A DNA stretch of 64,000 nucleotides from Vitrella brassicaformis CCMP3155 (GCA_001179505.1 CDMY01000295.1:310001-374000); one strand, 5' to 3'; counted from the stretch's first letter, positions 10,661 to 42,342 are shown. Made by a program: numbers and translations. The notes: generated by a model not told the origin, from the sequence alone.

Positions 10661-12618
10661 GATGCATGTGTGCCTGAGAGTATGAGTGTGTGTCTGTGTG
10701 TCTGCACACATACTCACAAGTTGTGGGGTCCGAAGTTGAGGAATTTGAGGTCCGCGAGGTAGCAGCCGAAGATGACGATCCACGAGGTCGTCTGGATCGC
10801 TGCCACCAGGAAAAAATGTGACGGAGCCACCTGGCACTTCGGATCGATGTCCAGCATAAACCTGCCACCCCACCACACAACACACACACACACACCAAAC
10901 CCCCTCTCAATGTCACTCTCGCCACGACCCTTCTCTCTCGGTGTCAGTCAGATCGGCCCACACCACAGGTACCTGTAGTTGACCCTATAGTGTTCGAGCA
11001 GGTGCATGCAGGCCCCGATCCCCCAGTTGACCAAAATGATGCTGAGGACCATTCTGAAGATGGGGAAGTTGGCCAAGACCTCGTCCAGGGTGTAGTCGGG
11101 GTTGGTCGGCTCCATGTAGCACATCACCACGATGTCCAGAAGCAGCACCATGCAGGCGCCGAGGAAGAAAAACAGACGGTCCTGGCCTGATTGACACATG
11201 GATAGACACATACACATATGGATGGCGGTGGGGGGGAGGGGTGTGGTTATGGCGGTTGGCTGACCAGGGACGTGTTTGGAGAGTTCCTTGAGCATCTCCT
11301 GCTGTATCTTGAAGTGGTCAGACGTCTTGTCGTCCGTTATCAGCCGATACAAGTCGCTGCACTTCTTCTGCATACACACAGAAAAGGGCTGCGTGTGTGT
11401 GTGTGTGTGTGTAGGCGTCTAGGTCTTCTTCTCACGGACCGACCTGTAGCCTGTGGACGCGGTCGAGCTTCTTGAAGGGCTGTTCCCGCACCCGCATGAT
11501 GTCCTCTGCCAGCCGCTCCACGCCACACAGCTTGTCGCGCTTCTTCCATATCTTGTAGAAACCCTACACAGACAACACACACACACACACACACACCGAG
11601 AGAGAGAGAGAGAGAGAGAGTGGGTGAGCTCTCGCATCCGCCCACCACACACAGACACCATTGGCCAATACCTACCATGTAGTTGAGTGACGAGTACTGC
11701 TCGAGCAGCTCACTGGCCGTGTACATGTTGCACAGCACCCGCTGGATGCGACCCCGGTACATCCGCCGCCACTTCTCGTCCTTCTTCTCCTTCTTCTCTT
11801 TTTTCTCCTTGTCCTTCTCGCCCTTGTCCTTCGAAGAAAACGACTCACCGCGGCTCACCTGGCGCACGTGAGAGGGACCCCCAAACGATGCCGACAAATG
11901 CAGACTCGCCTCGGAGGCACCACCTGCACCTGCACCGGCAGCAGTAGCATGGTTCGGCGAGCTGTCTGCCGTGTCCGGCGGCTGCGGCTCCCGCGGGCCG
12001 TGGATGGCAATACTCGGTGAGGACACTCCGCCTGTGTGGAGGCCGTGGGGGAGGGGCGCCTGCTGGGGCGTTGGCGAGAGGGGCTCCTCGGCCTGTGACG
12101 ATGAGGGGATGATGGGCAGAGGAGAGGGCCGGGCTGGGGCGGGGGGTGGCAGGGGGACTGTGGGGGGTGACGCTGCTGCTGATGCCGCCGCTGCTGCTGC
12201 ATCTGCCGACTGTCACCAAAGGAGGAGACACACACACACACACAGATACCACACGAGATCTGCGTCCTGTCCCACCAAGCCACCCGCCCAAGCTGCCCAC
12301 CTTCTTGCGCAATTCTTCGCCGAGGTTTTCCCTGATGGCCGCCTCGATGTGCTCGATGCGCTGCTCGAGGAGGTTGCACTCATTCTCAAAGAAGCGGTTG
12401 ACCTTGGCGAGCTCCCGCTCACAGGCGATGTCGAACATGCGCAGCTTCTCCTGGTCGGCCTCCCCCAGGAGGGGCTGCTCCGCCGGCGCGCCCTCTTGCG
12501 AGGCAACCGATGCCCGCCGTTCATCGCCCGGGAGGAGCTTCTTGAGCTCGTTATAGTTGATATACTCATTCGCCCACTCGGGCACGGCGTAGTGCGTCAG
12601 CTGCTTGCCGAACTTCAT
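8954..12618 (-). CDS. XPR1: SPX-EXS phosphate exporter (XPR1/PHO1/SYG1 family)
   Basis: N-terminal SPX MKFGKQLTHYAVPEWANEYINYNELKK, ELAKVNRFF, LLEQYSSLNY. EXS motifs PYYIRLMQC, NTGKY, YMFFWDVYMDWGL, RRLVQWALIRLENEHLTN. About 14 exons. Confidence 0.93.
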
Positions 12619-12719
12619 CTCGACCCCCTCCCTGCAGATCTATTGCATAGCTCGCAAAGCTTGACCGCAAGGGAGCAACAAAGGGACGTTTGTGGCGGTG
12701 CTGCTGGTGCGTGGGGATC
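12619..12719. promoter_or_regulatory. Putative bidirectional promoter between SPX-EXS and EMC6 (101 bp between start codons)
   Basis: Divergent ATGs at 12618 (-) and 12720 (+). Confidence 0.6.
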
Positions 12720-13315
12720 ATGGCAGTGAAGAAGGATCGTCGGTTCTTTGACGAGCAGCTGATCATCGAGAGCATGCTCGGGCACAACAGGAGAGTCGTC
12801 GCTCACTGGTGAGGGGGGGGAGGGATGGCCGTCACACACAGAAGATGTGCACTGCGTTTTGTTCGGCCTCTTGTCTGGGTGTGTTGTGTTGTGTTTGCAG
12901 TCGCAACTTCGCCGCCATTGTGAGTGGGCTGGCTGCCGGCATCCTGGGACTCACGGGGCTCTGGGGTGAGCGAAGCGAAGCCGAATGACGTGGCCTGGAT
13001 GGATTGATTGCACATCACATAGATATGTGACGCTGTTGTGTGGTCAGGTCTGTTGGTCTTTGTGATGGCCACGCTGGGTATATCGCTGATACTGCTGGCT
13101 CGAGTCAACTTTGACACTTCGTTGTACTTCCCGACGGTCAAGGAGGTCCTCATCGGACAGTTCTGGCACGGCATGATGGTACGCACACACACGCACTGTC
13201 AAAACGTGCATGTGTGGATGCATCAAAGATACCTGTCCACTTCGGTTCGGTGTGTGTGTGTCAGTCGTTCATTCTCTTTTGGACGTTGGCATACGACATG
13301 GTGTACATCTTCTGA
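12720..13315 (+). CDS. EMC6: ER membrane protein complex subunit 6
   Basis: Spliced protein MAVKKDRRFFDEQLIIESMLGHNRRVVAHCRNFAAIVSGLAAGILGLTG...GLLVFVMATLGISLILL...SFILFWTLAYDMVYIF* matches EMC6 hallmarks (GxxAGILGLTG; FWTxxYxxVxxF/Y end). Missed as a unit by the ORF track. Confidence 0.92.
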
Positions 13316-31716: not shown

Positions 31717-34559
31717 CACAGAGAGTGCCGTACCAGTCAACGCTTTTTGTGAATCAGGGAGAGAGGGAGAGAGGGAGGGATACATCTAAGCAGAGAGAGA
31801 GAGAGAGAGGGAGAGCGGGAGAAGGGCCGCTGTCTCTCTATCTACTGTGTCCGGCTATGCTATGCGGCTTGTGAAGTGTAGAGTACACGCACGACTGAGG
31901 GAGGGAGGCAGGGAGGGGGGTGTCGGTAATACAGACAGACAGGACAGCCGCCACCAGCACACAGCGGTGCGTCGTGGGCGTGGCGTGTGGGAGTGGGGGG
32001 TGAGGTGAGCCATCAGGTCGGTAGGGTAGGTAGCGAATTAGTCGGTGTGCACTTTTTGCAGGCGGGGCCATCTTATCCGAGTGAATGAATGATTGTTCAG
32101 TGTGTCTTGTAACTAAGAGTGAGTCACTGACTAACTAACTAAGTAACGTAGCCAACTACCTCCGTGACTCCCTACCTGCTGCCTGTCTGTCTGTCTGCCC
32201 GCCTGCCTGCCTAACGAGAGAAGGAACGGTCCGAGCCCTAGGGCCGTCGTTCCTTCTCCTCTTGCTGGTGGATGGATGGATGATACTTGTACGGACCCAC
32301 CGACACAGACCATCTCACTCACGTACCGTACCTGGCTCCTTCCTTCCCTCTCATGCTGGCTGGCTGGCTGGCTGGATGGATGGGTGGGTGGGTGGGTGGA
32401 AGGTTGGAAGGTTTTTTCTTCTTCATCGCATCGCTGCTGGCTGCCGAGCACACACGTCAGTGGGTGCATTTCTCTCACCCACACGCTGATCCGATCCAAC
32501 CACTGCCTTCAAGCCACCCATCCACATGCACCCATCGCATACATTTCCCTCCCTCCCTCTCCCTCCCTCGTTCGCTCATCCTGCCTGCCTGCGTGCTCGT
32601 GGTTTGTCCACCTGCCCGGCTGCCTGGCTGCCTGTCATTGATTCACTGATGCTGAATGGATGGATGGATGGAGTATTGAGAGGTTTTGCGTTTGCCCCCT
32701 TGCGCCGTCTGGTTTCCTTCGTTCTGGTGAATGAATCAATTCGCTCAAGTTATCTATCTATCTCTTCCCGTCTGCCGTCTTCTAGCTGGCCAATCAGAGT
32801 TTTTGGTCATCGCTCTTTTATTTCGGCCTGCCTTGCCTCCCTCCCCTGTGTGTCACGTCCGTCTATGCGTGTCTGTCTGTCTGTCTGTGTTTGGGGTCGT
32901 CACAAGTGCGTGACTGACTTGACTGACTGCATCTTGAATGTCCCATTTCCTTCATCCATCTATCCATCCATCCCTCGGTCCATCGAGTCGAGTGAGAGTG
33001 TAGGTAGACACACGACACGACCCCGCCCCCCGTCTGTGCGTCCGTCCTTTCGTGGCCATGTGGTGCTCTTTTTCAGTCGTGCCGACCACTGCTTTCTCTG
33101 TCGTCTCTCTGTCTGGTGCGGCATGGCTGGCGCGACACATGCAATGCACGGATGACACCCTCGCACGCCGCTTTCCTCTGTCCAGTCGGGCTCTTTGTGC
33201 CCCCCCACCCCAACTCCCGCTCTGCTCTTGCCTTCCTTCCTCGCTCTCTCACCCCGCCCCGCCCCTCTCTCCTCTAAAGAGCTCTCCCTCCTATCGCACG
33301 GATGGACAGACACCTCGATCGCATACACATAGACAGACAGACATAGAGGTAATGTGTCCATTACGTCTGTGTACTGAATGACTGATATCGTGTCGTGCCT
33401 ACTTGGGTGTGTGGGTCTTTAATCAAGGGCTCCCTCTCCGCCCGCCTGGATGCCCTCCTGACTCTCTGCCTGCCTATCAGTCTATCGTGTGTGTGTGTGT
33501 GTGTGACCTGTGTGTGTGTGACCTGTGCGTGTGACTGATGCTCACATGCGTGATGTCGTGCGTGTGTGTGCGTCTGTGTGTGGATCGGATGGATGCGTGT
33601 GGCGTGTTCGTACCTACCTACCTACCTGCCGAGTGAGTGAGTGAGTCTTTTTGCACCTTGAGGCCATCCATCCATCATCCTTTTCTCCTCCTATACATTC
33701 TAAGTACCCTGCCGTACTCCACCCACCGGTGTGCCTCTCCCCACCAGGCACACCCCGATCGGGCAACTGACAGGCAACTGGGCGATTGAGTGGATGAGTG
33801 AATGTCTGTCTACAGTGTGCTCTTACAGGGAGGGAGGGAGGGAGGGAGGGGGGGTGACCTGACCGAGCGACAGACCGACAGTCAGATTACTGCGTGTGTA
33901 ACATTTGGACAGCCTCTGCTTGCTTGCCTGCCTGTGTGTGTGCGTGTTGTGGTCATGTCCTGCCCGTGTGAGCTGTCAATTCACTTGGTGCTGCTGGTGG
34001 GTCGATCCCTCAGTAGAGCAGAGCTTTCACGCATCGTCGTTAGGTCTCGTTCGTTCGTTCAAGTGCCGGCCATCCACATGCACACTCATGCGTCATCCAC
34101 TCCACAATGCAGCGAGCAAGCCAGCCGTTCAATCCACACACACGCACACACACACATACACACACACACACAGAGCCACTCAGATGTCCTTCAGGCTCCA
34201 TTCCAACACACACACGCACCAGAGGGAGGGTCGCAAAAATCGTGTGTCGAGGCGCGCTACTGTCTCTCTGTCTGTCTGTCTGTCTGTCTGTCTGTGAGAG
34301 AGAGGGACAGAGAGAGACAGAGAGTCGGGAAAGGAAGACAACAAAAAACGGCAGCAGTCCATCACACAAACAGAATCCCACAAATCCTCCATCCATCCAG
34401 CAATTCCAGGCATTGCTTACTCTCACAGCCATTCCCCCGCCCAGCCAGCCATGTCGTATGGATGGATAGATGGATGTGCGGTCGTTGGCTACTTCGATTG
34501 TGTCACGGCGTCGTTGTGTTGGTGTGTTAGTGTAGCTATGTGCGTGGTGGGTTAGTCAC
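31377..34559. repeat. Microsatellite-rich intergenic region: (GA)n, (TG)n, (GGAT)n, (GACT)n, (GGGA)n
   Basis: No coherent exons; ORFs translate as simple-repeat peptides. Example: (GA)n at 31681-31712. Confidence 0.7.
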
Positions 34560-35315
34560 TTAGTTGCGTCGGGCGCGCTTGGCGCAGTGGCCGTCGGGCG
34601 GCTTGGCGGGGCCGGGGCCGGCCGGGCCGGGCGCCTTCTTGGCGGGTGCCTTGGCCTTCTTGATGGACTCGTGGGGGATGCCGAACAGCAGCACGTGGTC
34701 GTTGTTCCTGCACACACACATCACAAAGCCGCCGACACTCATGGGGGGGCCGCCGACCCACATGAGACATCTCATGCGTGTGTGCACTGTGTTGTGTTGT
34801 GTTGTGTTGTGTTGTGTTGTGTTGTGCACTTGGTGAAGCCCATGCCCATGTGCGTCCAGCCGTCCGACATCTGGAGACCGATGCGAAAACGCCACTCCTG
34901 CACACACATACATGCAAGCGACACATCATAACGCCACCATTGCAGATGAACATAACATAAAACAGCTAGCCCCAGTGCATCTCCCCCGTGGACGTGGTGC
35001 ATGGCCATGCAGGCCCTACATACCGCCTTCCTACGTACCGCCTCGGTGAGGATGACAGGACCGCCATTGCTGCTGGTATCGATGCCACTGGCAGCCTTCT
35101 CACGCAGAATCTCCTTCAACACCTTGTAGCCCTACGCATGCACACAGCACAGCCCTCATGATGCAATCAATGCATGGTCGGAAGAGATGGATTAGTTTGT
35201 GAGTGCTCACGGGTTTGTGGAGCTCCACAAGACGCCACTCGCCCCAATCGTCAGCCATGCGCTCGCCATACGAGGCGACAAGAGCACCCACCTGCCGCAC
35301 TTTCTCGTTGGGCAT
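34560..35315 (-). CDS. CKS1: Divergent Cks1/Suc1-like CDK regulatory subunit (4 exons)
   Basis: Spliced protein MPNEKVRQVGALVASYGERMADDWGEWRLVELHK...ILTEAEWRFRIGLQMSDGWTHMGMGFTKNNDHVLLFGIP... aligns colinearly with Cks YSDKYxDxxxEYRHV...LxEEEWRxLGVQQSxGWxHY...EPHILLFRRP. Confidence 0.75.
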
Positions 35316-35363
35316 GACGCAGCCGCTCCGAGACCCGTAAACTTCTATTTCAAAGCTCGCGCC
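35316..35363. promoter_or_regulatory. 48-bp spacer between the divergent start codons of the Cks-like gene and pgtA
   Basis: ATG at 35315 (-) and first in-frame ATG at 35364 (+). Confidence 0.65.
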
Positions 35364-38300
35364 ATGAGCGCGGCCGTCGTGATCTTTTCCAAGGACAGGC
35401 CCCTGCAGCTGTGCGGATGCCTCAGCTCCCTCACAACATGCATCCGCGACTCATCCGACGCCCAGATCCATGTCATCTACAAGGCGTCTGACGCGTCGTT
35501 TGCAGCGGCCTATGCTCGACTCGCCGAGAGATGGACCGATGCGCGCGTCCACTGGAGTCGGGAGGCACCTGGATGCGCGATTTCATCGGCCCTGGAGGGG
35601 CTGGAGGCGTCCCATGTGCTGTTCACTGTGGATGACGCGCTCTTCCTGCGGCCGCTGGCGCCCTCTCTTTCACGCTGTGTGGCTCTGCTGGAGGAGAACG
35701 ATGCGCTGCTGAGTGTGTGTTTGCGGCTGAACCCTCGTGTTGAGTATAGCCATCCCGCAGGATCGTTCTTCCCCCCGCCTGTGCTGCATTGGACACGGGA
35801 GAGGGATGCCCTGCTGTTGAGAAGGTGAGAGAGAGATTATGGCCATCTCTTAGCATAGCATGGATCGTATGGCATTGTCATGGGTGTGTATGCGTGATGT
35901 CATCAGGTTGAGGGAGGGCGATTGCAGCGGCGGCTGTGGTGGTGATGCGGGGGGTACGGGTGCTGACGAGTGGTCGATGCCTTTCGACCTCAGCGGCAGC
36001 ATCTACCGCACATCCGACCTCAGAAGGCTATTCACGGTCAGTCAGTCGATCAGGCAGAAATGGTACTGACTGACTGAGCGGGCCACGTCACGTCATGTCT
36101 GCTATGTGGTGTGATGTCATCTCATCTGTTCACCAGTGCATCGAGGAGAGTCCTGTATTGGGTCGCGAGTGGCTCGACCATCCCAATCGACTTGAAGCAG
36201 CTGGTAAGTAACTACCCGAGGCGCGCAGGTCAACACTTCGTATGGATCTCTGTTGTCTGTGTGTCTGTTTTATGCAGGCAACCGTGCCATTCAGGAGCTG
36301 ATGAGTGGTCTGGATCTCAACGCCACTCGCCCCTTCACAGCGGCGCCCACCCAGCCGCTCCTCACACTCATCACGGTCAGCCACCCACTCAGTGAAATGC
36401 CCTCCCTGCAAGGACCACCATCCTCGGTGGACTGTCTGTCTGTTTCGGTGCAGGCAAATCGTGTGCAGGATGTGTACTCGAACGCCATATACGCCGATGC
36501 ACCCCAATGGGACATCCGCTCCCTGCTCGCCACTTTCCACCAGATTGACCGCACCCACACCTCCCACACCGACTTCCTCACGGCTGTCGACGGCTTCTTC
36601 GCGGCCCCGTTCTACACATCGACTTACTGGGACTGCCTCCACACACCCCCGCCACCTCTGTCTGCATCCGCTGCCGTGCCGAGGAGCCCTGACGGGCCTG
36701 AGCCGCTGGTGAGCTGGCTGGTGCCGGCACACAACGCCAAGAAATATGTGGACGAGTGCATCGACAGCATTGGAGGCCAGACGGACATCGGAGCAGGTGA
36801 GTAGTGGGTGAGGGATGATCGAAGGGGCCGTGTGTGTGTCGTGTGCTTGCTTGTTTGGTTCAGGTGTGTATGAGGTGGTGCTTGTCGACGACTGCTCCAC
36901 CGACGGCACACTCGGCCGGCTGCATGCACGGGGGGCAGACGACCCCCGAATACGCGTCGTTTCCACACCCGAAAACCTCGGTCGGTTGGCACGTTATGAA
37001 ACGAATACCTCCTATTTGGTGCGTGGCGCATCGATGCGTCCTTGGTGCTACGTCAGGTGTTGCCGGTGCTCTCAACTACGGCATGTCACGCTGCCGTGGG
37101 ACGTTGGTCGCGCGGCTGGATGCAGACGATGTGGCGGAGCCTCACCGACTCGCCACACAGGTAGGCTAGGCGTACCACCAGAGAGAGAGAGAGAGGGAGA
37201 GGGAGTGTGTGTGTGTCATCCACCCCACCTTCTGCCATATTTTCACTCTCTGTGCAGCTGCGCTACCTCGCCACACATCCATCGGTCGCAGTGCTGGGCA
37301 CAGCCTTCACCACGTTCACCGACCCCCCGACCTCCCATTCCCCTCCCTCTCCCAGCGAAGCCAGCAATGCCATGCCGATGATGCCTCTGGGCGATCGTGT
37401 GTACCGCCCCGCGTGCCACCCCGTTCTGGTGCGGTGGCACATGCTCTTCCGCTGCCCCATCGCACATCCCACTGTGCTCATCAACCGGCCTGTGTGGGAG
37501 GGAGGGAGAGGGAGAGGGTTGGATGGGGAGGGAGGGCTTGATCTGGTGTACCCGACTGACGAGGCGGCGGAGGACCACGCCAGGTGGCTGGGTTTGCCTC
37601 CAGGTGTGGTGGTGTGCAATGTGGGGGACATTTGTGTGCGGCTGCGGCGTCATGGGCGGCAGAGGTCGGCGACGCACCACAAAGAGCTGCAGGAATCGTC
37701 CATCAGGGCTGTGCACAGGTGAGGGTGGGGTGGCCCCCATGCACAGACACGTTCCTGCATCCAAACAGGTGTGCAAAACTGCTGGCGTCTGTTCGTCTGT
37801 GTGTGTGTCTGTGTGTGTGTGTGTGTGTGAAGGTACATGCAGCGTCACGTCGACACGAGTGTCACAGTGGAAGAGGTCCAGGTGCTGTGGAAGCAACGGT
37901 GGGTGCGTCACAGACGTGGATGGACAAAGAGATCCCAAACATGTATGTCATGTGCGTACGACCTCCGCGGCTGTCTGTCTGTCTGTCTGTCTGTCTGCAG
38001 GAGGATTGACGGGTCAACAACTGGCAGACGCATCGACGACCTTCTGAAGGTAGGTGCGCTACGCCATGCAGACGCGCACATGAACCACATTTGCCTCCAT
38101 CTGAGCTGCACATGTCTGTTCACCTGTACGTGTGTGTGCTGTGCAGGCACTCGAGAACCACTTTGTGCAGCTGATCGACGACCTTGCCGGACAGGCACGC
38201 GAAGCCCCTCAGCAGCAGCAGATGGGGAGCGACTGGTGGGCCGACGGCCGCACAGCCGCGCTCAAGCAACACATACACTGCGCGACAGAACGGATCAGGT

Positions 38301-38589
38301 GGGTGGCCCGCATACACGCGCAGCATCGCCTGTGCATGTGTGTGGTGCATTGCGTTGCGTGCAGGGGTGAGATGTGTCTGGTTGAGCTGAGTCAGGGCAA
38401 CATGGAGGGGTCGCTGCCGCTGCTGCTCGAGTGAACACGGGAGGGAGGGAGTATGGGCTGGGCGCGGCGCCCCATCCAATCCACCTCTGCTATGCTATGC
38501 TGTGCTGTTCATGTGCATCTGTCTGTGTCAGGTGGCTGAAGAACCCGTCGAGCCAACAGCAGCTCAAGCGGCTGACAGCTGGCAGTTAG
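35364..38589 (+). CDS. pgtA: Bifunctional cytosolic Skp1 glycosyltransferase PgtA: N-terminal GT74 (alpha-1,2-fucosyltransferase-like) + C-terminal GT2 (beta-1,3-galactosyltransferase-like)
   Basis: GT74 motifs IFSKDRPLQL, LFTVDD, LRLNP..YSHP, WSMPFDLSGSIYR, HPNRLEAAGNR, NRVQDVYSNAIY follow the order I recall for Dictyostelium PgtA. GT2 motifs LVSWLVPAHN, VVLVDDCSTDGT, ARLDADD..PHRLATQL, WHMLFRCPIAHPTV, EDHARWL. No signal peptide. Last exon reconstructed (EWLKNPSSQQQLKRLTAGS*). Confidence 0.85.
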
Positions 38590-38863
38590 TTGATGTGTGT
38601 CGATTCGATGGAGGGCCAGCCAGGCCTGCGTTGGTTGCTGGAGAACTGCTCACTGCTGGCTGCAGTGCAGTGAGTGAGTGTGCCTTGACTTGATGCATCC
38701 ATTCAGGGAGAGAGAGAGAGAGTGTCCGTGCAGTCAGTACATTGACATCTGTGTATGGTATGCGACGTGACTCGACTCGACTTGACTTGCTGCCATCGAT
38801 CAGTAAGGCCTATCTATATTCGCTCTCTGTCTCGTTCTTCCCATCCATCCATCCATCTCTGTC

Positions 38864-39332
38864 TCAATGCGGCGATGCACCGTCCCCCTGGTGCAGCTGC
38901 TGCGTGTCCGCTGCAGTGGTGGCCGTCGCCTCGTCAGGCTTCCCACCACCAGCCTTCTCACCACCACCTTCCTCAATCGTCACTGCCTTCTGCTTCTCAC
39001 CACCAGCACCAACATCACCAGTTTCCTGATCTTCCTGTGTGCCATCCGGTTCTTTGTCATGCTTGGCTGCAGCGGCCTTGGTGCCCCCCACAACGAAGGG
39101 CTGCACGCGAGTTGTGACGTCTGTCTTGAATGCGTCGATGCACTCGACCTGCAGGCAGGAGGCCAGGTCGATGGACATCACACCCACGCGGGAGTTGCGC
39201 AGACGGTGGTCTCGCATTCCTGATTGCATTGCATTGCATAGGCAGATCGCACCGCACCGCATCCATGGATTCGCAAAATGTGACGTCTCTCTCTCTCTCT
39301 CTCTCTCTGACCTCTCTCTCCTCTCTCTCTCT

Positions 39333-41057: not shown

Positions 41058-42342
41058 TCATGGCGTCCTGTCGTCCTTGGTGTACACGTACAAGGACCAC
41101 TGTTCATGATACACACACCTCACCCCACTCACTCCGCTCACGCCCCCTCCCTCGCCCACCACCCCTTTCGGCAGCGGCCACAGCAGTGACACCACGCACC
41201 GTAGAGCGGCCGACTCAAACAGAGATGCAAACAGGTCAGTCAGCTGCTCCAAGGCCTCCGGCAACAGATACACAAAGCTGCATTGCATTGCACACGTACA
41301 CACAGATGCGCATGTATGTCATCAGACACGCAAGCAACAAGTGAAGTGCGTTTGCGTGTGTGATGTGCAGATCAGTCGGCCTACATGATGGTGGTTTTCT
41401 TGAGCCTCTCCTCTACAGCTGTATCGAGGAGGTTGCCGACCTCCATCACCACCTCACCAGCCGCGGGAGGCTGGCCCTCAGGCCGCACCGGGACACCAGC
41501 TGCCTTGGCCCTGTCAACCGCTTTGCCGATGAGCGCCTCGTCAAGGTCAATGCCCCAACCTGACGTGCACACACACACACACGCACACACACGTAGGGCT
41601 GAAATCTCACTTGGCCGTTGATGCGATGCGATGTCATGCGATGCGATGCGATATCATTTTGTCCGGACCGGCGCATTTGAATCTTCTGACGCATTCGATG
41701 ACCACTCGGCCATCGCCGCAGCCCAGGTCAGCCACGATGTCGGACGGCTGGACGTCCAGCAGACTCATCAGGCCCTCCAGCTTGGCCTCTGACGTCGCCC
41801 TGCAGACAGACAGACAGACAGACAGGCACAACACACCCATTCATTGATGGCCAGACAGGTGTAGTGTGGTGTCATCGTATGTGTGCTCCTTACTGATATG
41901 GCGAGATGAAGCCCTGAGAGTCCCAACCTGACACAGACAGCGGGAAAGCAGCAAGAGAAACAGACACACATTCGTCCATTCAGCTGGCTGACACGGACCG
42001 GGATTCCATGTCCGTCCGGTCTTCACCGTCTGAGTAGACCTGTTCGAAGCCCAAGTGGACAGAGAACACACACGGAGATGGATGGGCGAATGGTTTAATC
42101 TTCGTCGTCCGTTCCATTTGCTCACTCACCAGGTCAGGTTTGGTGCCCTGGAACGGCATCCAGTTTGCGTCATGATCGCTCTCAGCATCGCCTCCATCTG
42201 GCACAGCACCACCGTCCGGGCCGTCATCTGCGTGATCTCTCTGCAGATTCTCCATCGAGAGCCTTCCTTCGGCAGCCTGAGGTGCGCCAAAACGGTATCG
42301 CGAAACGATCGGATTCATCTTTTGCGAGCTCAATGCATGCAC
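41058..42342 (-). CDS. Class I SAM-dependent methyltransferase (FAM173/Methyltransf_25-like)
   Basis: Motif I IVADLGCGDGRVVIE, post-I GIDLDEALI, then IIFVYLLPEAL and VVSLLWPLP. Start codon uncertain (42255-42342). Confidence 0.8.

What the first reader, a model, noticed from the sequence alone, without database searches (positions are those of the whole stretch)
34560..38589. Skp1-glycosylating enzyme pgtA and a Cks1-like gene start 48 bp apart, head-to-head: candidate co-regulated SCF control module
Seen: the divergent ATGs (35315 and 35364) are separated by 48 nt. Both starts are constrained, because the Cks fold begins about 12 residues after its ATG and the GT74 FSKDR motif 6 residues after its ATG, so the 5' UTRs must be tiny or overlap. 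Established: PgtA extends the glycan on hydroxyproline of Skp1 (O2-sensing pathway of Dictyostelium and Toxoplasma), and Cks1 is an accessory factor of SCF(Skp2) and of CDKs. Inference: a shared promoter could couple oxygen-dependent SCF tuning to cell-cycle substrate selection. I am not aware of this pairing being described.
Basis: partly seen in the sequence, partly recalled or inferred. Interest (0 to 1): 0.8.

Follow-up and report, generated by a model that had tools for sequence, protein, structure and literature searches.

The report
Head-to-head pgtA and Cks-like genes
In the alga Vitrella brassicaformis the gene for the Skp1-glycosylating enzyme PgtA and a divergent Cks-family gene really do start 48 bases apart on opposite strands, but such tight back-to-back pairs are the rule in this compact genome, and nothing found here shows that the two genes work together.

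Summary
Observation confirmed. In Vitrella brassicaformis (contig C295), two genes lie head-to-head with 48 nt between their ATGs. One is a 13-exon, 723-aa GT74-like+GT2 gene of PgtA type (+ strand, ATG 35364). The other is a 4-exon, 137-aa CKS-family gene (- strand, ATG 35315). Spliced transcript contigs show 13 of the 15 introns and end about 28 nt apart, so the 5'UTRs are tiny.

The gene identities are right, and both are already in public annotation or literature. The "SCF control module" is not supported:
- Woo et al. 2015 report a median of 92 bp between Vitrella genes and an excess of head-to-head pairs.
- The spacer carries GCGAGCT. Earlier notes of this scan reported this heptamer in most divergent spacers of this genome.
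- The Cks-like gene scores weakest of at least 7 CKS-like loci. It lacks the CDK hinge (HEPEPH to TKNNDH), one anion-pocket arginine, and the Skp2-contact residues (S41A, N45R) behind the mammalian SCF-Skp2 role.
- No CKS gene lies beside PgtA-like genes elsewhere, though the sample is small and distant. By gene numbering, one neighbour of TgPgtA is Atg9.

Chromera synteny and co-expression could not be tested. This is an ordinary bidirectional pair of low interest.

The parts
34326..34559 (-). 3'UTR of the Cks-like gene (minimum extent)
   Evidence: Spliced contigs X2 record 5 and X7 record 9 run continuously from 34707 down to 34326.
34560..34707 (-). Cks-like exon 4. It holds the last beta strand (HVLLF), a Lys/Ala/Pro-rich tail ending in KRARR, and the stop codon at 34560-34562.
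   Evidence: The joined exons equal P0001. Intron 34708-34829 is GT..AG.
34830..34897 (-). Cks-like exon 3 (EWR..GLQMSDGWTH core)
   Evidence: Pfam CKS hit on this exon alone: E 0.0035, profile positions 37-53. A joint is seen at 34897/35039.
35039..35131 (-). Cks-like exon 2 (helical insert region)
   Evidence: Joints on both sides in runs X2 and X7; part of P0001.
35211..35315 (-). Cks-like exon 1, with the ATG at 35315
   Evidence: First in-frame ATG after an upstream stop. The X7 contig extends about 16 nt further upstream.
35316..35363 (.). 48-nt divergent spacer, the presumed shared core-promoter region
   Evidence: Read directly from the sequence. Listed contig ends leave about 35332-35359 uncovered.
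35354..35360 (-). GCGAGCT heptamer, 4 to 10 nt upstream of the pgtA ATG
   Evidence: 15 matches in the window against 10 expected, so no overall excess. Earlier scan notes report it in most divergent spacers of this genome; that claim was not tested independently here.
35364..35824 (+). pgtA exon 1: N-terminal half of the GT74-like domain (SKDR..Q and VDD motifs)
   Evidence: 612 homologues at E<=0.001. K10, D11, R12, Q15, V89, D90 and D91 are invariant in alignment A1. Single copy in the genome.
35907..36036 (+). pgtA exon 2
   Evidence: Joints in X1, X7 and X8; frame check.
36137..36203 (+). pgtA exon 3
   Evidence: Joints; frame check.
36278..36375 (+). pgtA exon 4
   Evidence: Joints; frame check.
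36454..36796 (+). pgtA exon 5: inter-domain region and start of the GT2 domain
   Evidence: Pfam PF00535 profile positions 1-23; joints; tblastn with Chromera P0006.
36864..36980 (+). pgtA exon 6: GT2 domain (VLVDDCSTDGT)
   Evidence: Pfam PF00535 profile positions 28-63, E 1.7e-6.
37057..37160 (+). pgtA exon 7: GT2 domain with the DxD motif (LDADD)
   Evidence: Pfam PF00535 profile positions 67-97, E 2.3e-6.
37258..37718 (+). pgtA exon 8: C-terminal part of the GT2 catalytic region
   Evidence: tblastn with P0006, P0009, P0037 and P0075; joint at 37160/37258.
37833..37898 (+). pgtA exon 9
   Evidence: Frame and GT-AG check. Exons 9 and 10 together match the 111+4 nt of X8 record 12 between 37720 and 38145.
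38001..38049 (+). pgtA exon 10
   Evidence: Joint at 38049/38147; frame check.
38147..38298 (+). pgtA exon 11
   Evidence: Joints; frame check.
38365..38430 (+). pgtA exon 12
   Evidence: Joints; frame check.
38532..38589 (+). pgtA exon 13, with the stop codon TAG at 38587-38589
   Evidence: Joint at 38430/38532 in all four runs; frame check.

Best explanation
This is an ordinary head-to-head gene pair of the very compact Vitrella brassicaformis nuclear genome.

The + gene is the single Vitrella orthologue of the PgtA-type two-domain glycosyltransferase. It has an N-terminal GT74-like domain and then a GT2 domain, the same order as Toxoplasma PgtA. By inference, it adds the second and third sugars to GlcNAc-hydroxyproline on Skp1.

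The - gene is a divergent CKS-family paralogue, one of at least seven CKS-like loci. It keeps the fold signature and four of the five phosphate-pocket residues. It has lost the canonical CDK hinge and the Skp2-contact residues.

The two transcripts start within or at the edges of a 48-nt spacer, so they must physically share one minimal bidirectional promoter region (inferred). That spacer carries the genome's recurrent GCGAGCT word. The adjacency is best read as a by-product of genome compaction. It may help stable expression of both genes, but it does not mark a dedicated oxygen, SCF or cell-cycle regulatory module.
For: - Organism and gene products.
- Both gene models are verified by splice joints in contigs from three studies and by frame checks.
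- GT2 Pfam hits are colinear on exons 5-7.
- The GT74-like exon 1 is single copy in the genome. It is homologous to two-domain proteins of Chromera (Cvel_18515), Ectocarpus, Phaeothamnion and unnamed protists.
- All matches of the Chromera protein at E below 8.9e-4, five colinear segments, fall in this gene.
- TgPgtA has the GT74-GT2 order (PMC6939170), and Vitrella is stated to possess the pathway genes (PMC11570480).
- Two Skp1 genes carry the DFTPEEE proline, and a Gnt1-like GT60 gene is present.
- Vitrella has a median of 92 bp between genes and a head-to-head excess. The same authors argue that such pairs mostly stabilise expression rather than co-regulate (PMC4501334).
- There are at least 7 CKS-like loci; four show canonical motifs and two more are partial or divergent matches.
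- Residue changes relative to human Cks1.
Against: - Contig ends 28 nt apart do point to a truly shared minimal promoter, so some co-expression is plausible and was not measured.
- The percentile of a 48-nt ATG-to-ATG distance among Vitrella divergent pairs was not computed here. Only the published median was available.
- Synteny in the key relatives (Chromera, colpodellids, coccidia) could not be examined, so conserved adjacency is not excluded.
- A Cks paralogue that has lost CDK-hinge residues must do something, and an SCF-related role is not ruled out.
Confidence: 0.8

Rival explanations
1. The shared promoter co-regulates PgtA and a Cks1-like SCF/CDK accessory factor. This would couple oxygen-dependent Skp1 glycosylation to the choice of cell-cycle substrates.
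For: The two genes are real and expressed, and their transcripts appear to begin about 28 nt apart. Both families touch SCF biology in some organism (PMC6939170, PMC3930463). The Cks-like protein keeps 4 of the 5 phosphate-pocket residues.
Against: - Short divergent spacers are the norm in this genome.
- The gene scores weakest of at least 7 CKS-like loci.
- N45 is Arg and S41 is Ala. N45R abolishes Skp2 binding in mouse, and these are the positions that exclude Cks2 from Skp2.
- Yeast Skp2 is not known to bind Cks1.
- Cks and CDK are absent from the Toxoplasma SKP1 interactome paper and its held supplement.
- No CKS gene lies next to PgtA-like genes in L009, L011 and L012.
- TGME49_260640, next in number to TgPgtA (260650), is Atg9.
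Confidence: 0.06
2. Two back-to-back but independently regulated core promoters. The genes share DNA but not regulation, and their expression is uncoupled.
For: Contigs for the two genes are not assembled together in every run. X1 and X8 hold pgtA contigs but no Cks contig. X2 holds the Cks contig but only fragments of pgtA. X7 holds both. Woo et al. note that co-expression of head-to-head pairs is mostly modest.
Against: The tool itself warns that holes in contig coverage prove nothing and that depth cannot rank genes. Twenty-eight to 48 nt leaves little room for two separate promoters. Only one recognisable recurrent element (GCGAGCT) lies in the spacer.
Confidence: 0.25
3. The starts are mis-assigned. 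One or both genes would have upstream exons or long overlapping 5'UTRs, so the 48-nt figure would say nothing about promoter architecture.
For: Contigs cannot prove transcript ends, and 128 contig pieces were not listed.
Against: Contigs from two separate studies start within 4 nt of each other, at 35360 and 35364. The Cks contig stops at about 35331. There is no in-frame upstream ATG. In homologues the GT74-like match also starts 5-17 residues from the N-terminus. P0001 in the public annotation uses the same ATG.
Confidence: 0.05

Closest known systems
Toxoplasma gondii PgtA (TGGT1_260650), the Skp1 beta3-GalT/alpha2-FucT
   Same: It is a two-domain cytoplasmic-type glycosyltransferase with the GT74-type domain first and the GT2 domain second (PMC6939170). 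The pathway context is present in Vitrella: Skp1 with the target proline and a Gnt1-like gene. Vitrella is stated to have the pathway genes.
   Different: The Vitrella protein has 723 aa and 13 exons. Its activity and sugar specificity are unknown.
Dictyostelium discoideum PgtA, founder of the GT74 family
   Same: It is a bifunctional GT2 plus GT74 enzyme acting on Skp1 (PMC6939170, PMC11468063).
   Different: The domain order is swapped in Dictyostelium, with GT2 first. No sequence was available for a direct test.
Chromera velia Cvel_18515 (P0006, 880 aa)
   Same: It is the closest named relative. Homology is colinear over residues 6-704, and it has the same GT74-like then GT2 order.
   Different: Identity is only 28-55% per segment. 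Its genomic neighbours could not be retrieved.
Human Cks1 and yeast Cks1 (PDB 1BUH, 2AST, 1QB3)
   Same: It belongs to Pfam CKS over profile positions 2-64 of 68. The equivalents of R20, S51, W54 and H65 are conserved, K11 is conservatively replaced by R19, and the EWR..G.Q.S.GW.H core is kept.
   Different: - It has a longer insert of about 16 residues between beta2 and the LTE.EWR helix.
- The hinge HEPEPH is TKNNDH, with E63 changed to N.
- R71 is I, S41 is A and N45 is R.
- It has a 37-residue basic Ala/Pro/Lys tail.
- E-values against PDB Cks chains are only about 0.01.
Head-to-head gene pairs of chromerid genomes (Woo et al. 2015)
   Same: It is a divergent pair separated by less than 100 bp in a genome whose median intergenic distance is 92 bp and in which head-to-head pairs are over-represented.
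   Different: Nothing distinguishes this pair, apart from the suggestive annotations of its two members.

Membership tests
PgtA (bifunctional GT74/GT2 Skp1 glycosyltransferase) | GT2 (GT-A, inverting) domain with a DxD motif | tested here: met
   Pfam PF00535 hits are colinear on exons 5, 6 and 7 (profile positions 1-23, 28-63 and 67-97; E 1.7e-6 and 2.3e-6 on exons 6 and 7). LDADD lies in exon 7.
PgtA (bifunctional GT74/GT2 Skp1 glycosyltransferase) | A domain homologous to the GT74 alpha2-fucosyltransferase domain founded on DdPgtA | tested here: inconclusive
   No Pfam or NCBIfam model exists for it, and the PDB holds no relative. Exon 1 matches 612 proteins, including the two-domain proteins of Chromera, Ectocarpus (E 2e-7) and Phaeothamnion. 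Brown algae are reported to have one GT74-GT2 gene each (PMC11468063). The link to DdPgtA and TgPgtA is therefore indirect. Their sequences could not be fetched.
PgtA (bifunctional GT74/GT2 Skp1 glycosyltransferase) | Apicomplexan-type domain order, GT74 then GT2 | tested here: met
   The GT74-like match covers residues 5 to about 145 and the GT2 domain begins at about residue 385. The order in TgPgtA comes from PMC6939170.
PgtA (bifunctional GT74/GT2 Skp1 glycosyltransferase) | Cytoplasmic enzyme with no signal peptide or membrane anchor ahead of the catalytic domain | tested here: met
   The invariant SKDR motif starts at residue 9, and the homology starts at residue 5. This leaves no room for a leader. 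Judged by inspection only.
PgtA (bifunctional GT74/GT2 Skp1 glycosyltransferase) | Pathway context: Skp1 with the target proline, a Gnt1 (GT60) gene, and a single pgtA gene | tested here: met
   Two Skp1 loci carry NDFTPEEEA. There is a PF11397 hit at C301. The GT74-like exon is single copy. All matches of the Chromera orthologue at E below 8.9e-4 fall in this gene.
PgtA (bifunctional GT74/GT2 Skp1 glycosyltransferase) | Transfers Gal (or Glc) and Fuc to GlcNAc-O-Hyp-Skp1 | not testable with these tools
   This needs an enzyme assay with recombinant protein or a Vitrella extract.
CKS (Pfam PF01111) | Profile match above the curated cut-off over most of the domain | tested here: met
   P0001 scores 38.8 bits against a cut-off of 27, E 1e-9, profile positions 2-64 of 68. 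Exon 3 alone scores 17.9 bits.
CKS (Pfam PF01111) | Phosphate (anion) pocket: K11, R20, S51, W54, R71 in human numbering | tested here: inconclusive
   The aligned residues are R19, R28, S77, W80 and I99, so four of five are kept and R71 is lost. K11, R20, S51 and R71 are listed in PMC3930463. W54 as a pocket residue rests on my own knowledge.
CKS (Pfam PF01111) | CDK-binding beta-hinge HxPEPH including E63 | tested here: not met
   HEPEPH aligns to TKNNDH, with a two-residue insert just before it, and E63 becomes N91. E63Q is the CDK-binding-defective mutant (PMC3930463).
Cks1-type cofactor of SCF(Skp2) | Skp2-contact residues S41 and N45 | tested here: not met
   S41 becomes A66 and N45 becomes R71, next to an inserted F70. 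The S41E and N45R changes in Cks2 preclude Skp2 binding (PMC3930463). N45R abolishes Skp2 binding (PMC11846996).
Cks1-type cofactor of SCF(Skp2) | Presence of a Skp2-type F-box partner and a p27-like substrate | not tested
   No search was made for them. [quoted passage not shown]
Co-regulated bidirectional-promoter pair | Divergent orientation with starts less than 1 kb apart | tested here: met
   48 nt between the ATGs.
Co-regulated bidirectional-promoter pair | Both TSSs mapped inside the spacer | tested here: inconclusive
   Contig ends lie at about 35331 and at 35360/35364. Contigs cannot prove transcript starts.
Co-regulated bidirectional-promoter pair | Correlated expression across conditions | not testable with these tools
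   Only assembled contigs were available, and their depth cannot rank genes.
Co-regulated bidirectional-promoter pair | Adjacency conserved in relatives | tested here: inconclusive
   No CKS match lies beside PgtA-like genes in L009, L011 and L012. L010 and L017 are bacterial clusters. By gene numbering, one neighbour of TgPgtA is Atg9. Chromera was not retrievable.

The most novel reading that the evidence does not exclude
The spacer of about 30-48 nt, with its single GCGAGCT element, is a complete bidirectional core promoter. It would keep PgtA and a CDK-hinge-less, neofunctionalised Cks paralogue in fixed stoichiometry. That paralogue would act as a phospho-epitope adaptor on glycosylated Skp1/SCF complexes rather than on CDKs.
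Probability: 0.04. Interest if true: 0.6.

Novelty: new member of a known kind. Interest (0 to 1): 0.15.

Why it matters
As it stands, the locus mainly gives two things. First, it provides clean, transcript-supported gene models for the Vitrella PgtA orthologue and for an unusual Cks paralogue. Second, it adds one more example of the extremely short bidirectional promoters typical of this genome. The more useful leads are side observations: the expansion of the CKS family to at least seven loci, and the recurrent GCGAGCT word in divergent spacers.

Tried and rejected
- Pfam on Cks exons 1, 2 and 4 alone gave nothing. Only exon 3 hit CKS. The full protein became usable only after P0001 was recovered with a stop-free ORF reference.
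- Exons were joined only inside scripts, to count stops and to compare with P0001.
- A word search with Chromera P0006 was swamped by GT2 words. The search restricted to residues 1-340 found only Ectocarpus and bacterial proteins. Neither search returned the Vitrella protein or TgPgtA.
- The 30 representatives that were looked up included no Toxoplasma or Dictyostelium protein.
- The look-up of encoding contigs has no record for P0001 or P0006.
- The metagenome scan with exon 1 found only two distant loci. The weak P0001 tblastn hit in L017 lies antisense inside an ABC-transporter ORF of a bacterial cluster. The hit in L018 is the low-complexity tail. Both were rejected.
- The AlphaFold single-sequence model of P0001 was unusable (pLDDT 46), so no fold search was run.
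- An ORF-only heuristic meant to ask whether GCGAGCT is enriched in candidate divergent spacers of this window had no power. Candidate spacers cover 8-65% of the window and p stayed above 0.3.
- The window-wide GCGAGCT count is not above chance (15 against 10.1 expected).
- Contig depth was not used as an expression measure, following the tool's warning.
- No complex prediction was run, because this report does not claim binding.
Full report
**Organism and place.** The window is contig C295, 310001-374000, of a 72.7-Mb assembly in 1064 contigs. The 137-aa product of the minus-strand gene is letter for letter a public protein of Vitrella brassicaformis CCMP3155, which UniRef names a cyclin-dependent kinases regulatory subunit. 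The DNA has about 58% G+C and many short introns.

**The observation.** The minus-strand ATG starts at 35315 and the plus-strand ATG at 35364, with exactly 48 nt between them. Neither reading frame has an in-frame ATG in the 150 nt upstream; the Cks frame has an upstream stop and the pgtA frame is open back to 35199. The finding's limits, 34560 and 38589, are the last bases of the two stop codons.

**Gene models.**
- The Cks-like gene has four exons: 35315-35211, 35131-35039, 34897-34830 and 34707-34560. All introns are GT-AG, and the joined translation equals P0001.
- The pgtA gene has 13 exons from 35364 to 38589. All introns are GT-AG, and the product is 723 aa with no internal stop.

I laid Logan contigs of four public runs from three studies on 34000-39000. 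These contigs are spliced. Eleven of the 12 pgtA introns and two of the three Cks introns appear as exact joints. The two introns not listed (34708-34829 and 37719-37832) contain microsatellites that the tool skipped. For the pgtA one, the contig length between its flanks fits exons 9 and 10. One 3564-nt contig (X8 record 12) carries the whole pgtA ORF.

**Transcript ends.** The pgtA contigs of two different studies begin at 35360 (X8) and 35364 (X7). The X7 Cks contig, by arithmetic on its record coordinates, reaches about 35331. That leaves roughly 28 nt uncovered in the listed pieces. Contigs cannot prove ends, and 128 pieces were not listed. Still, the picture fits 5'UTRs of a few to a few tens of nucleotides and a physically shared core promoter.

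**What the plus gene is.** Pfam GT2 (PF00535) matches exons 5, 6 and 7 colinearly, at profile positions 1-23, 28-63 and 67-97. Exon 1 (153 aa) has no Pfam, NCBIfam or PDB relative. In an exhaustive search it matches 612 proteins at E<=0.001.
- The best hits include proteins of 786-991 aa with the same layout: this domain at the N-terminus and GT2 starting at about residues 370-420. Among them are Chromera velia Cvel_18515 and a Phaeothamnion protein.
- K10, D11, R12, Q15 and the V89-D90-D91 motif are invariant across eleven sequences.
- The Chromera protein aligns colinearly over its residues 6-704. All its matches at E below 8.9e-4 in the Vitrella genome, five colinear segments, lie in this gene.
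- Exon 1 is single copy in the genome.
- Exon 1 also matches an Ectocarpus two-domain protein. Brown algae are reported to have one bimodular GT74-GT2 gene each (PMC11468063).
- TgPgtA has the GT74-GT2 order and DdPgtA the reverse (PMC6939170). Chromera and Vitrella are stated to possess the pathway genes (PMC11570480).
- In the same genome I found two Skp1 genes with the DFTPEEE proline and a GT60/Gnt1-like gene.

I therefore accept the gene as the Vitrella PgtA orthologue. A direct comparison with the characterised enzymes could not be made, and its activity is inferred.

**What the minus gene is.** P0001 passes the Pfam CKS cut-off (38.8 bits against 27) over profile positions 2-64 of 68. 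It aligns weakly (E about 0.01) to yeast and human Cks chains in the PDB. It is not the canonical Cks1.
- A six-frame scan of the genome with PF01111 finds six other loci: C537, C218, C391, C446, C219 and C399. C537, C218, C391 and C446 carry canonical motifs (YSEKY..YEYRHV, GW.HY, and EPEPHILLFRRP in C218). C219 is a partial match, and C399 resembles the divergent window copy. All matches listed for them (16-40 bits) are close to or above the 17.9 bits of the window copy's best exon.
- P0001 has no close paralogue.
- Against human Cks1 the alignment gives K11 to R19, R20 to R28, S51 to S77 and W54 to W80, all kept or conservative. R71 becomes I99. The hinge HEPEPH becomes TKNNDH, with E63 as N91. 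S41 becomes A66 and N45 becomes R71, beside an inserted Phe.
- According to PMC3930463, K11, R20, S51 and R71 form the anion pocket. E63Q is the CDK-binding-defective mutant. S41 and N45 are the Skp2 contacts, and their replacement in Cks2 precludes Skp2 binding. Yeast Skp2 is not known to bind Cks1. N45R abolishes Skp2 binding in mouse (PMC11846996).

So the single property that links Cks1 to SCF has no sequence support in this protein, and even canonical CDK binding is doubtful. The protein also has a longer insert before the LTE.EWR helix and a basic Ala/Pro/Lys tail ending in KRARR.

**Is the pairing special?** Woo et al. 2015 report three things (PMC4501334):
- The distance between protein-coding genes in Vitrella has a median of 92 bp.
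- Closely spaced genes are head-to-head more often than expected.
- Such pairs mostly show modest co-expression and are better seen as stabilising transcription than as co-regulating the two genes.

Earlier notes of this scan on other pieces of the same genome report that the heptamer GCGAGCT sits in most head-to-head spacers. The heptamer occurs once in this spacer, at 35354-35360, and its last base is where the X8 contig begins. I could not test the enrichment claim independently. The window-wide count is not above chance, and an ORF-only proxy for divergent spacers had no power. Elsewhere in this window the word lies 31-37 nt upstream of a plausible SPX-type gene start at 12618 and 6-12 nt upstream of an ORF start at 42318. 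Whatever its status, the spacer looks like the generic Vitrella type rather than a pathway-specific one.

**Conservation and interaction.**
- The Chromera locus could not be retrieved.
- PgtA-like genes could be seen in context in two related metagenomic contigs of unknown origin and in a Phaeothamnion contig. None has a CKS gene or a CKS-like tblastn match nearby.
- Two further loci turned out to be bacterial polysaccharide clusters.
- In Toxoplasma, the gene numbered next to TgPgtA (TGME49_260640) is Atg9. That consecutive IDs mean adjacency is my own knowledge of ToxoDB numbering. The other neighbour is unknown to me.
- The Toxoplasma SKP1 interactome paper and its held supplement never mention Cks or CDK.

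None of this is strong, but nothing points towards coupling.

**Expression.** Only contigs were available. X7 holds both genes, X1 and X8 hold pgtA without a Cks contig, and X2 holds the Cks contig with only fragments of pgtA. The tool warns that holes prove nothing, so I draw no conclusion from this.

Only exons by reference and database proteins were used.

**Verdict.** The 'SCF control module' is an inference from adjacency in a genome where such adjacency is the default, and it rests on a Cks paralogue that lacks the features behind the Cks1-SCF link. I rate it an ordinary bidirectional pair, with low interest and about 0.05 probability that a real functional coupling exists.

Noticed in passing
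G000 contigs C537:39926-40211, C218:32239-32846, C391:66466-66845, C446:5347-5695, C219:27067-27141, C399:33823-33966 (loci L001-L008): Counting the window copy, Vitrella has at least seven CKS-family loci. Four show canonical motifs. C399 resembles the divergent window copy (GW.HMG...DPH). Most eukaryotes have one or two Cks genes, and the dinoflagellate Breviolum has three (PMC6829154).
   Followed up: partly
window 12618-12720, 42318-42330: GCGAGCT/AGCTCGC lies 31-37 nt upstream of an SPX-like gene start (MKFGKQL..., - strand ATG at 12618). That start faces a short + strand first-exon ORF at 12720, leaving a 101-nt spacer. The word also lies 6-12 nt upstream of a - strand ORF start at 42318. 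This fits the promoter-word lead of earlier notes, but the partner genes were not verified.
   Followed up: partly
window 35009-35048: The 5' end of Cks intron 2 holds a tandem duplicated donor-like 15-mer (GCG|GTACGT then GCG|GTATGT). The second copy would be an in-phase alternative donor adding five residues. Only the first donor is seen in the contigs.
   Followed up: partly
window 34780-34833, 37174-37219, 37800-37830, 37965-37998: The introns of both genes carry short microsatellites, (TGTGT)n, (AG)n, (TG)n and (CTGT)n. The read tool skipped them as repeats.
   Followed up: no
window 38532-39000 and beyond: The pgtA contig X8 record 12 runs about 1.4 kb past the stop codon. Many contigs break with differing continuations at 38688-38859. 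This suggests a long 3'UTR overlapping the next gene's transcript, or a repeated element there.
   Followed up: no
L021 (G000:C408:27558-30653): A third, weaker Skp1-like match (MTPEEEQEVK) runs into a stretch that reads N (masked or withheld).
   Followed up: no
L009, L011 (metagenome contigs): Intron-less PgtA-like genes of 808-858 aa (GT74-like plus GT2) sit on 13-15 kb metagenomic contigs. Almost none of their neighbouring genes has a Pfam hit, and their origin (protist or giant virus) is unknown.
   Followed up: no
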